From assembly GCF_026571515.1 (NCBI RefSeq), contig NW_026867088.1:62001-126000 (forward strand): a stretch of 64,000 nt of DNA. The letters run 5' to 3'. The DNA comes from Ruditapes philippinarum. Taxonomy: Eukaryota. The position numbers and the translations under genes are program-made. Below the pieces are notes generated by a model that was not told where the DNA came from, did no database searches, and saw only the letters and a program-made list of their open reading frames with translations. Positions 19,514 through 25,829 of this stretch are shown one piece after another (positions within the stretch are counted from its first letter, which is position 1; the number at the start of each line of letters is the position of its first letter).

Positions 19514-22500
19514 TTAATATTTAATACTAATATTATCATACTGGGTCAAGGCAAGCAGCGACACTCCATATGTGTACGAGTCACATGACCAAAATGGGAA
19601 ATACCCTCCAGCCTCGCTGTTATATCCATCAAAGGTCATTGGGGTCATTCTCCCAAAATGAGGCTGCTTCAACATGGTGTCGTATTCAGCTTTAGTAACA
19701 ACTCCTTTCATTCCAAGGATGTTTTTTGGGGTTGCCGGAAATTTTGTGTCGGGGAATGTGGTCCCATTAAAATATTCCCTCCTATTAGCTGGATAGAAGA
19801 ATGGCATACTCTGAAATGGATAAGAAAGAAAGAATATTCAGATGCCATATTTGCAAAGGAAGTAATGAAATGTAAGGTCTATTTAGAATTTAACAGAAGA
19901 AACTAGGAACCATTATAGTTGCTTAACTTAGATAATTATATTATGAGACAATGACGGCACCAAGAGGCAGACTAGCGTAGCTGGCTCTCTGGTGGTGGCA
20001 TTTGTCTACTATCGTTTAACCATATTATATGCATTAAAGATTTGTGCAAGGAAAAGGAATGATGTGTGGCAGCATGGCCGAGTGGTTAATGTGTCGGACT
20101 AGTAAACTAAGGATTGCTGTAAACATTTCAAATCACGTCAGGGGTAAGCTGTTGTTTCCATGAGCAAAAAAACTTTACACTCATTGCTTATTACTGGTTG
20201 GTTCCAGGAACAGATTGAAGAGTGTTTAAATAAGCTTATAGCTCCCAACACATGAATACTAATACCTTAAGTCCATGAAATATAAGATTATTTACATTGT
20301 GTCGAAGGACAGAAAAAATACCTCAAGACTTTTGCCAGAACCAGAGAAGAAACTGTTCCATGGTTTGTAATTGCCAGATAATACATTCTTTTCCAACCAC
20401 ATTACCAACTTCTTTACTGTGTCTTTAACATAGCTGGGAGTATCTATAAATGATATACAAATATGATCCTTGGTTTGCACAACTTGCAAATTAGTTAAAA
20501 TGACATACTATTGTTGTTGTTTTTCAATGTGTATCATTATTTGTTACAAATCAAAGATATATAACAAGTAAAGTATCTCTTTCTCTTCTCATGCTTAAAG
20601 GGACTCCACTAAGGTTGTTTGACATGGTGGGCCTTAAAATATTTTCTAAAGATTTTGTACTAATTGGTGGAGGTGTGAACCAATAACTTATGTGAAAATT
20701 ATCAGGTCATTCACTTACCCCTTTTTTTCACGAATATTCATTTTATTGTGCAAAATGGCCCCAAAATAAAATGCATTGCAACTCTTTTTACTCAGTTCGT
20801 CTAGGAATCGTACAAAATATCCATTTACAATATATCTCTGAGTATATTTCTTTGTTTGCCATAGCAGAGTTTGCCATTTTTCAGTGCTTCACTTGATGTT
20901 TGTATGATTTTCAAATTTAATGCTTTTAGGCCTAATACCTAAGTGGAGTTCCTTTAATCTCTAATTGAGTATTTATATGACCTCAAATGCTGCAGACAAA
21001 TGAACAATGGTTAACTGAAGTTAAAGAACTCTTTAAGATAATGAAAAACTGTCTCACCATTTTCCCAAACAAGTTGTTTATTTTGAGTCAATGTCCATGT
21101 ATTAATTAAAGCATTCAAGGAAACAGCAGTTGAAAATATACGATCTTCAGCTCGGTTCTGAAACATATGTTATAATCTACCATTCAGTCTTACAATAAAA
21201 TATAAAAAAACAACAAACATGGCAATGCCATAAAAAAAGATTTTTTTCCAAACTGGAAACCATTTTTCTATTTCTAGTAACTGTGACCTTGACCCTAGGG
21301 AGCCAAAAATCAATCTCAAGCAAGGTACAATGTATCTATGTAAGCTTTCAATATACAAAGTTTAACTGGAATATCTTGTTCCTAAATCTAGTTATCAACT
21401 GGAAACCACCTGTTGACACCTGCCTGAATGCCAGGATTGAAATGAAACGATTCCACATTGGTTTATGCTTTATACAGCTTAAATATATGTGTAAAAGAGG
21501 CTGTTTCTTACAGAACATATCATTAAATGTTAGGGAAAAAATTCATTTATTTACCACAGATTTATTAAAAAGATTAATGTCATCATCTCCAAGGAAATCA
21601 TCGATGTACATTGAACCGTCTACGTCAGTTTTAGTTGATCGAGCTATATCTTCTGACATCTCCGTCCATAACACAGGTCCTAGAACTTTCAATGCATATT
21701 TCAACATCTGGAATGATGATTAAATCATAAATGATAATTTTATATTTACACATTTTTCTTTATCATAATAACAATCTACAATAGTCAACACATGTATTTC
21801 CACATCTGAAATGTAGACTAAATCTTATTGTTTTTTTATTGAATGTTTTCAATTATTTTTTTACTGAAATAACAATAATAACTATTTATTACTACTTGAT
21901 TTCCTTTTATTAAATATAGAATCCCCATTAAATAAACATTCTCACTTAATAAATTATGTAATTTAAAAAAATTGAACAAAAACATTTCTTCATTTACCAA
22001 AACAAGATACACATATGAGCCGCACAACAACAAAACCATCACAGTGCGTTTGCAACAAGCATGAATCCAGACCAGCTTGCACATCAGTGCAGTCTGATCA
22101 GGGTCCATGATGTTCGCTATCGTTTTCTCTACTTGTAATAGGGTTTGTAAGCTATGTTGGTTTTGTCATGGTGCGGCTCATATCATGTTTATGTGGTCAT
22201 AAGAATTTAGGTCTAACAAATCTGAATGTACCTGATCAAGACTTGGTGATGTAACAAATCTCCTATCAGTAGACAGCCTTCTGTTCAGCAGAGAGTATGA
22301 CCTTGACACGAACCAGTAGAACTCAAACTTAGACGGGTAGTATGTTAACGCCAGATCTGGACGAGACGACAGATTTGTGGACATCTCATGTGCTATCAGG
22401 GACGTTGTGTTCATAAATATTTGCTTTTAAAAAAAACAAAGATAAGAAATTTACAGAAATAAAGTAAACTTATCTGCTCAGAAATGTGGCATAATTTTAT

Positions 22501-25500
22501 GAACAATTTCCATGACTTACAAATATCAGAAATAGTTATTGACTTAAATCAAAGCAACGGTATATCTTATTAAATTGGGGCTTGCAAAGGTAATACATTT
22601 TTACTAGATTAGGAATGAGACAAATAGATCCATATTGTTTTTAATTTATAATTTAGTAACATCTAGAGTCTAGCATTGTATCAGAAATCATGTGGGATTT
22701 GTTATCAGTCATTTGCAAAGAAAATGGAAATAACTGATAAGTTGCGTTCTGTAGTCGTATCCTAAGTGTATCCTAAATCCTGGGACTTCTGATAAACTAT
22801 AGGACTAACTCAAGACCATTTTAATAAATATTTTCATTTTTAGTCAAACTTTTAGATTTTTCTCAGAAAAGTTAGAAATACAATGAACACACTTCAATCC
22901 ACAATGTGTAAATGTTCATCTTCCATGGCTATTCAGAAATTGAAGAATCTTAACATAAGAGTCATAAGTAAGGACATATTTTAGACCAAGGACTTTCCCT
23001 GAAACGCAACCAAGGGAATACATGTTTGATTGACCAACCAAGGGCAAAAAAAGTGTTGAAATCAGTGTAAAAATACAAGACAGACAAACAGACTATTAAA
23101 CAATATTTTTTTAAAGTGAGCTGAAAACTTCAAGAAGTTCAGTCTGACACTTTCACACATGAGAAAATGTACATGATATGTGCATGTGTCTCAAGGTCAA
23201 AGACTGCAAATGATTTAGTAATACCCAGTACCTGTATACCATCATCTATATGTTCTAAACACAGCCCTGTGATTGTACATGTGACTACCCCAAATATAAA
23301 GTTGGCAGACACGGTCACGTCCACGTTGTTCACGTTAAACGGCATTACAACACCTTTATCAAACAATGATTTCACTTCTTCTGTGTCCTGCAGCTATAAC
23401 ACAAAATAAATCTGTATTAAATTAGTACAGTCATGCCCTTGAAAGGTTAATTTTGAAGCACAAAGTGCTGATAATTTACCTCCATGCAAACTCCACTGAG
23501 TATTAGCCAAAGTTATGAATTTTGAGCCAAAAGTTGGTCACTGTATAGCGGCCAATGTGAACATAAATGTCAATAACCTGAGACGATATGAAAAGGACGC
23601 GGTAGCCTTTAAAAAGGGCTGTTATGCCAGAAAAGTAATTGCAGACAGGCCTAATTGCTCTTTTATGTTGGTAAATTCTGATTAAAATCAGCACCTAAAT
23701 AATGCCATGCATTAGGATCTGACAATCACCAATGGGTTGTAAGAAATAAGTAGATCTGAACTTTAGTCAGACTGATATTGGTAGTAATTCATTAACAAAA
23801 CTGACATTGTCTTTTTGCTTTTTTCTTTAATTGTGGACATACCAGTACATGTAACAAGCTTCCATATTGATCGAAAATAAGAGAAATTTTCAATTAAAAC
23901 AATAGATCAAAATAGCTTTGTAAACAAATGGCTCTGAATAGAATTCCATATTAAATGTTTGCAATGAAAACATGATTAATTTACCCATGTAGTCACTAGA
24001 GCAACATCTTCGTTGTTGGAATCAGCTTTCTCTAGAAATGATCTCAAATACATGTATGTCCTTGGATCTATTGTGGTCTGTATGGCTGTTTTAGAAAATG
24101 GTCTGTGAAAAATAGAAACAACATAAATGGTCTGTGAAAAATAGAAACAACAGAAATGGTCTGTGAAAAATAGAAACAACAGAAATGGTCTGTGAAAAAT
24201 AGAAACAACATAAATGGTCTGTGAAATAAAAACAACAGAAATGGTCTGTGAAATAAAAACAACAGAAATCAATGACCATATACACCGAGTTTAAAATAAT
24301 GCAACATTATATAGGAATAAAGCATAGGAACATATAAAAATATTATATATTTTTACCAATTATTACTATGTTATTTTACTGAAATCATAGTGAACAAAAA
24401 GTGCGGCGTCTGTGGCCAAGTGGTTAAGGTTGTTGACATCAAACTGCTGTAGGTTCAATCCACATCAGCATCACCGAATTCTACATGTAAGAAAAGCTAT
24501 CCAGCTAGCTTACAGAACATCAGTGGTTCTACTCAAGTGCCCGTTTGTGCCTGACAAAATGTACAGACTGGCACCTGAGGTCTTAATCCACCAGCAAAGC
24601 TGCAAAGTCGCCATATGACGTATACTGTGTTGATGCAATGTAAAACCCAATTAAAAAAAGAAAAGAATAAACGGTATTTTATAGGCATTTTTTATTACAG
24701 TAATTTTATTTCTTGGAAATTTAACAACCATTACCTGTAAGCGTATTTTTTCACTTTTTCAAAGACTGATGATAAATTACTATTTTGCTTTGCCCAGGTC
24801 TGAAATCCATCCGGAAAATCTTCTCTAAACAGTGATAAAAGACTGCCGAGTCCTATATTAACAAATGTATCGTCAAAGTCCGGAGGTATGCGAAACGCTA
24901 GAGTAAACATATCCCTGGAATATATGTAATTAAAAATATAATTATCATATTCAGTACAACCTCTGCAAAGTGGTCATCTATACAGCAATCACCTCTTTAC
25001 AACAACAGTATCATTATTCCAAAAAAAGACTATATTTAACCTCTGTTGAGCAACCACTTCCTCACAATATTTTATGTCTGGCCTAGAGAGATATTTTTTT
25101 TCAAGGAATAAGTTTTTAATTATTAAAATATTCTAAATTGTAATTCCGATGAAAGTCAAATTGATATATTGATATTGCGAAATTTCAGTGACAGCAGTGC
25201 TATGTTAATACAATACATGTATATGGAAAATAAACTTACTTTGAACGAAACAACTCCTCGAGTACTTTTTCAAGATCTTTAAGCCCCAATGCTCCAAGTA
25301 TTTCTTCTATCAGTTTCTGAGGTAGGTAATCTGGAAGTGCTAAAACTTCAAACAAATTATGAGGCGAGCTTTGATAAGTCAACACGGTTTTATTAAACTC
25401 TTGCTGCCAAAATGTCATTTCTGAGTTTTGATATGGTGCATTTTGATTCCTAAACAGATTAACAGCATTTAAAGCAAGGTCGACTTGGCTGTCCGTCGGT

Positions 25501-25829
25501 TTAGGGCCATTTCCATAAATGTACGCCTCTATTAAACATGATGTTACCCAGGCAGGTGTAAACATGTTATTATCTGGCACTTTAAAGTTGTCTCTAAAAA
25601 GGTAATACTGTTCGTTTCCATGGAAATTTAGTTTCACTTCATTTGGATACATTCCTTTCTTCATTTCCCATGATGGCGGAAATATACTAAAGTCTGTGTC
25701 TTTTAATACTTGAGCATTCTTGATTTTGTTGAACAGTTTCTCAATGATTGTTTCGGTGTTTGCTAAAGATAACATGCCACATAAAATCAAGCAGGCAGTA
25801 CATGCCATATTTCTTGTGAGGGTCAGCAT
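19514..25829 (-). CDS. Uncharacterized signal-peptide protein, 9 coding exons, 637 aa; candidate class II terpene-cyclase-like (alpha/alpha barrel) fold
   Basis: Exons: 25829-25240, 24914-24735, 24102-23985, 23393-23232, 22423-22232, 21707-21555, 21157-21058, 20443-20322, 19810-19514. All introns are GT-AG with consistent phases, total 1914 nt ending in TAA. Hydrophobic N-terminus ACTACLILCGMLSLA and several N-glycosylation sequons. Motifs: PDNNMF, RIPPDFDDT, NNVDVTVSANFIFG, TYYPSKFEFYWFVSR, EDRIFSTA, FWSCDSYTYGVSLLAL. The gene structure is well supported; the functional call is inference. Confidence 0.9.
20067..20250 (+). mobile_element. tRNA-derived SINE (family S2, CORE-like centre); reverse copy at about 47950-48092
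   Basis: GCATGGCCGAGTGGTTAA head and centre TCCATGAGCAAAAAACTTTACACTCATT. Confidence 0.65.
20599..20953. mobile_element. Kolobok-like non-autonomous element, family K1
   Basis: TTAA|AGGGACTCCACT ... AGTGGAGTTCCT|TTAA. TTAA target with AG...CT termini. Confidence 0.75.
22016..22180. mobile_element. Palindromic MITE family A, copy 3 (internally deleted)
   Basis: Both termini are present; most of the right arm is missing. Confidence 0.85.
24095..24270 (-). repeat. 27-29-bp minisatellite, 6 units, spanning an intron-exon junction of the 637-aa protein gene
   Basis: Minus-strand unit TGTTGTTTCTATTTTTCACAG|ACCATTT(C/A). Confidence 0.95.
24404..24652 (+). mobile_element. tRNA-derived SINE (family S1)
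   Basis: Pol III A box TGGCCAAGTGG, B box GGTTCAATCC, body GCTATCCAGCTAGCTTAC...GGCACCTGAGGTC, tail GTAAAACCCAA. Confidence 0.8.

What the first reader, a model, noticed from the sequence alone, without database searches (positions are those of the whole stretch)
19514..25829. Secreted animal protein with the motif set of a class II terpene cyclase (DxDD)
Seen: an intact spliced 637-aa ORF with a signal peptide and, in order, PDNNMFTPAWV, RIPPDFDDTF (exon 24914-24735), NNVDVTVSANFIFG, TYYPSKFEFYWFVSR and a C-terminal FWSCDSYTYGVSLLAL. Established: P-DxDD-T is the catalytic acid motif of class II cyclases (squalene-hopene cyclase YPDVDDT). From memory, single beta-domain microbial class II cyclases (merosterol/drimenol-synthase types) carry later D-x-x-V-x-A-N-V-L, YY-x-S-x-x-x-F-x-Y-x-x-S-R and terminal S-x-x-x-T-x-A-x-x-L-x-A-L motifs in this same order. 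Inference: this may be an unrecognised metazoan class II cyclase-like enzyme, distinct from oxidosqualene cyclase (DCTAE). The signal peptide and glycosylation sequons imply a lumenal or extracellular location, which is unusual for such enzymes and could mean a different substrate. The introns argue against bacterial contamination.
Basis: partly seen in the sequence, partly recalled or inferred. Interest (0 to 1): 0.82.

Follow-up and report, generated by a model that had tools for sequence, protein, structure and literature searches.

The report
Secreted clam protein with terpene-cyclase fold
This clam gene is intact and transcribed, and it encodes a secreted protein from a large unnamed eukaryotic family that has the fold and the invariant acid motif (DxDD) of class II terpene cyclases, enzymes known in animals only as the sterol-making oxidosqualene cyclase.

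Summary
A 9-exon gene on the minus strand (25829-19514) has 1914 coding bases (637 aa plus stop). Every intron is GT..AG, and all eight junctions appear in spliced contigs of public runs. The genome is probably Ruditapes philippinarum.

No Pfam or NCBIfam model matches the exons or 51 full-length homologs. The family is nevertheless large. It occurs in molluscs, amphioxus, a starfish, a sponge, rotifers, Tetrahymena, Vitrella and Pharyngomonas, always as "uncharacterized".

Across 164 homologs the motif I-P-x-D-x-D-D-T/S is conserved at D 100%, D 100%, D 96%. The window gene keeps 69 of the 71 most conserved positions.

Profile-profile comparison with squalene-hopene cyclases is not significant. 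The 3D position of the aspartates could not be checked.

Most likely this is a lumenal or secreted acid catalyst of terpene-cyclase descent. Its substrate is unknown. A GH88/GH105-like hydrolase is the main rival.

The parts
19514..25829 (-). Whole coding region: 9 exons, 637 aa plus stop
   Evidence: tblastn collinearity with P0001; GT/AG at every intron, correct phases and a 1914-nt total; spliced contigs for all eight junctions
25240..25829 (-). Exon 1 (aa 1-196 plus 2 nt). It contains the start ATG, the signal peptide and the PDNNMFTPAWV motif.
   Evidence: phmmer with this exon found 186 relatives
25761..25829 (-). Predicted signal peptide, about aa 1-23 (MLTLTRNMACTACLILCGMLSLA | NT)
   Evidence: Best 10-mer hydropathy is 2.54 at residue 12. 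153 of 164 homologs have such a segment, and only 2 have an internal TM-like stretch. The cleavage site is my inference.
24735..24914 (-). Exon 2, carrying RIPPDFDDTF
   Evidence: junctions 24913|25239 and 24102|24735 in contigs
24869..24880 (-). DFDD codons (window residues D209, F210, D211, D212). D211 is the predicted general acid.
   Evidence: Sequence read directly; 100/100/96% Asp conservation in 164 homologs; in the P0001 model the motif starts helix 208-223
23985..24102 (-). Exon 3 (RPFSKTAIQTTIDPRTY...TTW), missing from the simple ORF view
24096..24269 (.). Tandem array of 29 bp x 6.1 copies at the end of intron 2. Its last unit supplies the exon 3 acceptor; the other units repeat an acceptor-like cacag|acc.
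   Evidence: the spliced contigs use the 24102 copy
23232..23393 (-). Exon 4 (MPFNVNNVDVTVSANFIFG)
22232..22423 (-). Exon 5 (RPDLALTYYPSKFEFYWFVSR)
21555..21707 (-). Exon 6 (…YIDDFLG…)
21058..21157 (-). Exon 7 (EDRIFSTAVSLNALINTWT)
20322..20443 (-). Exon 8 (…PWNSFFSGSGKSLE)
19514..19810 (-). Exon 9 (PFFYPAN…NGT…FPFWSCDSYTYGVSLLAL, stop TAA at 19516-19514)
19760..19768 (-). Conserved N-glycosylation sequon NGT
   Evidence: The sequon is present in 86% of 164 homologs at this column

Best explanation
The gene encodes a soluble protein of the secretory pathway, probably N-glycosylated. It is built as one class II terpene-cyclase beta domain (an alpha/alpha toroid) plus about 300 residues of family-specific insertions. 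It belongs to an old, unnamed, eukaryote-wide family that descends from, or is closest to, the squalene-hopene / drimenol-synthase / MstE type cyclases.

Proposed mechanism (inferred, not shown): the middle aspartate of the invariant D-F-D-D-T motif (D211 in the window protein, D209 in the Mya protein) sits at the N-terminal end of the fourth toroid helix, at the top of the central pocket. There it acts as the general acid, protonating a C=C bond or an epoxide of a lipophilic, probably isoprenoid, substrate. The insertions cap the pocket, as the extended loops do in the monodomain cyclases MstE and AsDMS. The conserved basic residues (R77, R269, R370, R390, K533 in Mya numbering) hold an anionic or polar head group.

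The reaction would take place in the ER/Golgi/lysosomal lumen or outside the cell, for example in gut fluid.
For: Shown:
- The gene is intact and spliced, with spliced contigs in public runs.
- The family has at least 186 representative clusters. No Pfam or NCBIfam hit was found for the exons or for 51 full-length members, and no sequence match to any PDB chain.
- The AF2 model of P0001 has pLDDT 93.8 and pTM 0.92.
- The Asp residues of DxDD are 100/100/96% conserved, with P before and T/S after as in YPDVDDTA. The window gene keeps 69 of 71 top-conserved columns.
- The motif begins helix 208-223 of the model.
- The ESM Atlas nearest clusters that carry a Pfam family are all SQHop_cyclase_C or AstC-like_C. 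Its nearest bacterial structural neighbour is auto-named squalene cyclase C-terminal (TM 0.59/0.78).
- The signal peptide is family-wide and the NGT sequon is 86% conserved.

Inferred: the helix-4 equivalence of DxDD rests on sequential, full-length structural alignments and on motif spacing.
Against: - No sequence-profile support: hhalign of A1 against 45 SHCs gives probability about 1%. The score of 24.7 compares with 22.9 for the reversed template, and 6 of 25 segment-shuffled templates score as high or higher.
- Pfam SQHop_cyclase models do not match.
- The 3D position of the aspartates and the lining of the cavity were not examined.
- The structure is that of a 57%-identical homolog, not of the window protein.
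- Many of the most conserved residues are polar (N, D, R), unlike the largely aromatic pocket of squalene-hopene cyclase.
- The usual substrates (FPP, GGPP, squalene) are cytosolic or membrane-bound, and no lumenal class II cyclase is known.
- A QW-like Q-x4-G-x-W is only a family majority and is absent from the window protein.
Confidence: 0.42

Rival explanations
1. It is a secreted or lysosomal carbohydrate-active enzyme of the six-hairpin type. The closest mechanism would be that of GH88/GH105 unsaturated uronyl hydrolases, which hydrate a vinyl-ether C=C by Asp protonation. It would be used to digest algal or bacterial polysaccharides, and the DxDD aspartates would be its catalytic residues.
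For: - It has a signal peptide and a conserved sequon.
- The named hosts are aquatic: filter feeders, grazers and protists. That they feed on algae or bacteria is my own knowledge.
- Many conserved residues are N, D, R, W or Y.
- UniRef names the Vitrella member a GH63 C-terminal domain protein.
Against: - All 33 top structural matches are class II cyclases or the unannotated 6ij1, and the best of them is 6 Z units above the best glycosidase.
- No GH Pfam family matches any of the 51 members, even at E up to 10.
- The extended P-D-x-D-D-T signature is that of class II cyclases.
- The ESM Atlas nearest clusters that carry a Pfam family are all SHC-like or AstC-like, and none is a GH.
Confidence: 0.27
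2. It is an acid/base enzyme of cyclase descent that no longer makes rings. Examples would be an isomerase, hydratase or epoxide-opening enzyme acting on dietary isoprenoids such as epoxy-carotenoids, phytol or polyprenyl phosphates, working in the gut lumen or the food vacuole.
For: The fold and DxDD evidence is the same as for the best explanation. This reading better fits the secretory location and the distribution in aquatic feeders and protists. The polar conserved residues would suit oxygenated or phosphorylated substrates.
Against: There is no direct evidence for any substrate. No described enzyme of this kind has this fold and location in eukaryotes. This reading cannot be separated from the best explanation by computation.
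Confidence: 0.18
3. It is a non-catalytic secreted binding or carrier protein that uses the toroid pocket, in the way that transcobalamin/haptocorrin or the thioester domains of complement and alpha-2-macroglobulin use theirs.
Against: - An aspartate triad that is invariant over about 160 sequences, from ciliates to chordates, points to catalysis.
- The structural matches are 7-10 Z units weaker than those to cyclases.
Confidence: 0.08

Closest known systems
Drimenol synthase AsDMS, class II cyclase beta domain (PDB 9MHS, 9MLO, 9M7D-F)
   Different: AsDMS is bacterial and cytosolic and is fused to a HAD phosphatase. The clam protein has a signal peptide, no HAD domain and about 300 extra residues. 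No sequence-level similarity is detectable.
MstE, monodomain merosterolic acid cyclase (PDB 6SBB) and the small myxobacterial 'SHC' structures 8PAJ and 8PAK
   Different: These proteins are about 345 aa, bacterial and have no secretion signal. MstE uses DxD and binds a prenyl-benzoate (PMC12414744). The clam family is about 635 aa, eukaryotic and secreted.
Squalene-hopene cyclase and oxidosqualene cyclase (PDB 1GSZ, 2SQC, 1W6K; Pfam PF13243/PF13249)
   Different: SHC and OSC have two domains (beta and gamma) and are monotopic membrane enzymes. The Pfam models do not match. The profile alignment is not significant against controls. The QW repeats are not conserved in the clam family.
GH88/GH105 unsaturated uronyl hydrolases (PDB 4Q88, 4CE7, 1NC5)
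   Different: Their structural similarity is lower than that of every class II cyclase in the list. There is no Pfam match. I did not examine whether these families carry a DxDDT motif.

Membership tests
Class II terpene cyclases (SHC/OSC/CPS/DMS/MstE superfamily) | Beta-domain (alpha/alpha)6 toroid fold | tested here: met
Class II terpene cyclases (SHC/OSC/CPS/DMS/MstE superfamily) | Conserved DxDD (or DxD) general-acid motif with a strictly conserved middle Asp | tested here: met
   The window has D209-F-D211-D212-T. In 164 homologs the three Asp are 100%, 100% and 96% conserved and T/S follows in 99%.
Class II terpene cyclases (SHC/OSC/CPS/DMS/MstE superfamily) | The motif sits at the structurally equivalent place, the N-terminus of an inner helix at the top of the central cavity | tested here: inconclusive
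   The motif starts helix 208-223, the fourth core helix. Its spacing from the domain start agrees with AsDMS D323, and hhalign puts DxDD on DxDD. However, no coordinates were available for a residue-level superposition, and the hhalign score equals its nulls.
Class II terpene cyclases (SHC/OSC/CPS/DMS/MstE superfamily) | Sequence-profile membership (Pfam PF13243, PF13249, PF00432) or a significant profile-profile match | tested here: not met
   No Pfam hit for the exons or for 51 members at E up to 10. The PDB profile search returned nothing. hhalign against SHC gave about 1% probability. PF28380 AstC-like_C was probably not in the library used here.
Class II terpene cyclases (SHC/OSC/CPS/DMS/MstE superfamily) | QW repeat motifs | tested here: not met
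   There is one QW-like F-W-x-Q-x4-G-x-W in the family consensus. Its G and W are only majority residues, and the window protein has T and L at those positions.
Class II terpene cyclases (SHC/OSC/CPS/DMS/MstE superfamily) | Hydrophobic, aromatic-lined, water-excluded pocket | not testable with these tools
   No model coordinates were returned. There are 19 conserved aromatic residues but also many conserved N, D and R.
Class II terpene cyclases (SHC/OSC/CPS/DMS/MstE superfamily) | Protonation-initiated cyclisation of an isoprenoid | not testable with these tools
   This needs an enzyme assay.
Six-hairpin glycoside hydrolases (GH88, GH105, GH9, GH15, GH63, GH76) | Profile membership in a GH family | tested here: not met
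   No GH Pfam family matches any of the 51 members at E up to 10.
Six-hairpin glycoside hydrolases (GH88, GH105, GH9, GH15, GH63, GH76) | Best structural neighbours are glycosidases | tested here: not met

The most novel reading that the evidence does not exclude
This family is a second, previously unseen lineage of class II terpene cyclases in animals and other eukaryotes. Its members would be monodomain and would act in the secretory lumen or outside the cell. It would supply the missing protonation-type cyclases behind marine-invertebrate terpenoids such as drimanes and meroterpenoids of molluscs and sponges, or it would perform a so-far unknown extracellular isoprenoid cyclisation.
Probability: 0.25. 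Interest if true: 0.9.

Novelty: new variant of a known kind. Interest (0 to 1): 0.7.

Why it matters
To my knowledge, oxidosqualene cyclase is the only class II cyclase known in animals. A 2025 survey of the whole superfamily mentions no metazoan, molluscan or signal-peptide-bearing members (PMC12414744). This report describes a conserved family of about 635 aa that carries no Pfam model and no name. It is present from ciliates to amphioxus, often in several copies per genome, and it shares fold and acid motif with these cyclases while being routed into the secretory pathway.

If it cyclises or otherwise protonates isoprenoids, it opens a new compartment for terpene chemistry. It would also offer candidate enzymes for marine-invertebrate terpenoids whose cyclases are unknown. 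If it proves to be a hydrolase, it shows a cyclase-like scaffold recruited for digestion.

Either way the family deserves a name, a structure and an assay. Tetrahymena and rotifers offer tractable systems for that work.

Tried and rejected
- Pfam and NCBIfam scans of each exon gave only noise. Pfam scans of 10 and then 51 full-length homologs also gave only noise.
- A profile search of all PDB sequences returned 0 hits at E up to 10.
- Foldseek alone found nothing below E 0.01 and gave a mix of GH9, cyclases and complement TED. VIA-align was needed to rank them.
- For hhalign I took 45 squalene-hopene cyclases from a pattern scan for YPDVDDTA. There was no significant match. The greedy alignment looks convincing motif by motif, but reversed and segment-shuffled controls score the same. 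I therefore do not count it as evidence.
The family profile found nothing in 5 bacterial genomes or in 201 Planctomycetota genomes. Small PF13243-positive ORFs from Myxococcota had no DxDD and were dropped. I could not reach Bacteroidota or Hydrogenedentota, where the Atlas points.
- A literature search for six locus names of family members found nothing.
All searches used single exons by reference or database homologs. No phylogeny was built.
Full report
**1. What is in the sequence**

The region holds one gene on the minus strand. tblastn with the closest full-length database homolog, Mya arenaria XP_052820625 (P0001, 633 aa), gives nine collinear matches that cover residues 7-631. There is no second copy in the window.

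I fixed the exon borders from the sequence and from public reads. They are 25829-25240, 24914-24735, 24102-23985, 23393-23232, 22423-22232, 21707-21555, 21157-21058, 20443-20322 and 19810-19514. Every intron starts with GT and ends with AG. No exon has an internal stop. The total is 1914 nt, which is 637 codons plus TAA.

All eight junctions occur in spliced contigs of runs X1 and X5. These are transcript-like, but their RNA status is only guessed. One raw RNA-seq read of X23 crosses the last intron. Coverage in the two raw RNA runs is otherwise very low over the exons and high only over intronic repeats.

The only exon hard to see by eye is exon 3 (24102-23985).

Everything below rests on single exons given by reference or on database homologs.

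**2. Which genome**

NCBI's [quoted passage not shown] (P0241) is 100% identical to several exon-sized segments on contig C3788 of the window's assembly, and that contig has the same length as the one recorded for P0241. The window is therefore most probably from the Manila clam.

The assembly holds two further loci of the family, on C3788 and C7601. They are about 92% identical to each other at DNA level and have no detectable DNA similarity to the window gene. Both keep IPPDFDDTF.

**3. The family**

No exon hits any Pfam or NCBIfam model. Exon 1 alone finds 186 representative clusters among 1.84 billion proteins. Many are 620-670 aa.

A profile of 51 full-length members (alignment A1) retrieves 188 more proteins. 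Their sources include:
- bivalves, gastropods, cephalopods and a chiton;
- three Branchiostoma species;
- the starfish Patiria and the sponge Amphimedon;
- monogonont, bdelloid and seisonid rotifers;
- Tetrahymena, the chromerid Vitrella and the heterolobosean Pharyngomonas;
- many unnamed metagenome or transcriptome contigs.

Every named member is "uncharacterized" or "hypothetical", and none has a precomputed Pfam domain. Scanning all 51 members against Pfam at E up to 10 gives only scattered noise, with no cyclase family and no glycosidase family. A profile search of all PDB sequences finds nothing.

The family is therefore old, eukaryote-wide rather than specifically animal, and unnamed.

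**4. Conservation**

In an alignment of 164 full-length members, 71 columns are at least 90% conserved. The window gene, added exon by exon, matches 69 of them.

The motif reads I(89%)-P(99%)-P/A/S-D(100%)-x-D(100%)-D(96%)-T/S(99%).

Other conserved blocks sit at the starts of helices of the model:
- PDxNxFxT
- IDPRTY
- NVNNVDxxVxAN
- RPDLxLxYYPS
- EDRxFST
- FFSGSxK
- FPxWS…T

Of the 164 members, 153 have an N-terminal hydrophobic segment and only two have any internal TM-like stretch. There is no conserved cysteine and no KDEL-type ending. One sequon (NGT, window 19768-19760) is kept in 86% of members. This is what a soluble lumenal or secreted glycoprotein looks like.

**5. Fold**

AlphaFold2 was run on P0001 with A1 as its alignment. 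P0001 is 57% identical to the window protein over 628 aligned exon residues. The model has mean pLDDT 93.8 and pTM 0.92. It has 19 helices and several hairpins.

Foldseek alone was indecisive. All its hits had E above 0.01 and mixed GH9, cyclases and complement TED.

The exhaustive VIA-align search of 48,161 PDB representatives gave a clear order:

|---|---|---|
| 9mhs | drimenol synthase (rmsd 2.8 A, 298 residues, 15% identity) | 27.2 |
| 5bp8 | ent-CPP synthase | 25.1 |
| 1gsz | squalene-hopene cyclase | 24.9 |
| 8paj | monodomain "SHC" | 24.2 |
| 7xkx | Tpn2 | 24.1 |
| 6vpt | Rv3377c | 23.4 |
| 6ij1 | unannotated Actinoplanes protein | 23.2 |
| 8zg0 | SsDMS | 23.0 |
| 6sbb | MstE | 22.9 |
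| 1w6k | human OSC | 22.7 |
| 1nc5 | GH105 YteR (first non-cyclase) | 19.6 |

Only about 300-340 of the 633 residues align, even to two-domain enzymes. The protein is therefore a single beta domain with about 300 residues of insertions, not a beta-gamma pair. Monodomain cyclases need extra loops to close the pocket against water (PMC12232559 and PMC12414744). The conserved insertions here could do that, but this is my inference.

The ESM Atlas points the same way, though only at lead level (scores below 0.9). Its nearest clusters that carry a Pfam family are all SQHop_cyclase_C or AstC-like_C. Its nearest bacterial structural neighbour is a 471-aa Bacteroidota cluster auto-named "squalene cyclase C-terminal domain" (TM 0.59/0.78).

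**6. Does DxDD sit where the cyclase acid sits?**

I could not superpose residues, because no coordinates are returned.

Indirect evidence is consistent. The motif opens helix 208-223, the fourth core helix of the model. The structural alignments are sequential and span the whole domain on both sides: model 21-628 against AsDMS 227-526. The AsDMS acid D323 lies 96 residues into that domain. That matches D207-D210 once the 38-70 and 125-200 insertions are discounted.

I also built a profile of 45 squalene-hopene cyclases from a pattern scan. A greedy hhalign places DxDD on DVDDTA and lines up several other helix-start motifs in order. But the default run gives only about 1% probability. The greedy score of 24.7 is matched by the reversed template (22.9) and by 6 of 25 segment-shuffled templates. 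I therefore count the sequence-profile comparison as no evidence either way.

**7. What it probably does**

The points shown are an intact, spliced gene, a secretory signal, a class II cyclase-type toroid and an invariant P-D-x-D-D-T.

From these I infer that the middle Asp (D211 in the window protein) is a general acid working in a capped pocket, in the lumen of the secretory or endolysosomal system or outside the cell.

I commit to a protonation-initiated reaction on an isoprenoid-like substrate with a polar or anionic head group (confidence about 0.4). The fold ranking and the extended motif both point to cyclase descent, and the five conserved basic residues recall the Arg cluster that binds phosphate in AsDMS.

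Three things weigh against this. The usual prenyl substrates are not lumenal. Many conserved residues are polar. GH88/GH105 enzymes, the best non-cyclase matches, also protonate a C=C with an Asp, are secreted, and degrade algal uronans.

That last point would suit the hosts. The named ones are aquatic, and many are filter feeders, grazers or phagotrophs, though calling them algal or bacterial feeders is my own reading. This hydrolase reading is the main rival (about 0.27). A non-cyclising isomerase or hydratase of cyclase descent (0.18) and a pure binding protein (0.08) follow.

**8. Novelty**

I found no paper that mentions the family. A search for six of its locus names found nothing. The 2025 survey of the whole class II cyclase superfamily contains no mention of metazoan, molluscan or signal-peptide-bearing members.

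I rate it a new variant of a known kind: a cyclase-type beta domain in a new setting (eukaryotic, secreted, monodomain with large insertions), with its function open.

**9. Limits**

- The structure is of a homolog, not of the window protein.
- The family profile found no match in the 206 bacterial genomes I could search. The phyla the Atlas points to could not be reached.
- No tree was built.
- RNA evidence comes mainly from contigs whose RNA status is only guessed.

Noticed in passing
window 24096-24269: A 29-bp unit is repeated 6.1 times (95% match) at the 3' end of intron 2. The last unit provides the real acceptor of exon 3, and the other units carry the same cacag|acc acceptor-like site. 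Using an upstream unit would add 29 nt and shift the reading frame. The spliced contigs use only the 24102 copy. Earlier notes of this scan report tandemly amplified splice sites elsewhere in this genome (s1-810661, s1-813888).
   Followed up: partly
G000:C3788:105605-111645 (+) and G000:C7601:39383-45725 (+); loci L002-L005, L008, L009: Two further loci of the same family lie in the same assembly. They are about 92% identical to each other at DNA level, so they may be haplotigs or a recent duplicate. They have no DNA similarity to the window gene. Both keep IPPDFDDTF. The C3788 copy corresponds to NCBI LOC132742840 of Ruditapes philippinarum (100% identical over several exons), which identifies the genome.
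   Followed up: partly
window 20100-20299, 21100-21299, 22100-22299, 24500-24699: Short intronic stretches have very high depth in all four runs (up to about 10,000 summed contig depth in X1), and most of the laid raw reads run on into unrelated sequence. They look like transcribed dispersed repeats rather than parts of this gene.
   Followed up: no
whole assembly G000: Neither Pfam SQHop_cyclase_C (PF13243) nor SQHop_cyclase_N (PF13249) gave any exon-level match in the clam assembly, so no oxidosqualene cyclase was detected. The search is exon by exon and insensitive, so this does not prove absence.
   Followed up: partly
window 19683-19810 and 21555-21707: One X1 transcript contig differs from the window at 10 of 128 and 11 of 153 positions in exons 9 and 6, but at 0 of 122 in exon 8. 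This suggests a divergent allele or a chimeric assembly with a close copy.
   Followed up: no
window 1-64000: Exon 1 of this gene is the only biologically meaningful ORF of 130 aa or more in the 64-kb window. The other such ORF (21283-21723, plus strand) lies antisense across intron 6 and exon 6 and has no support.
   Followed up: no
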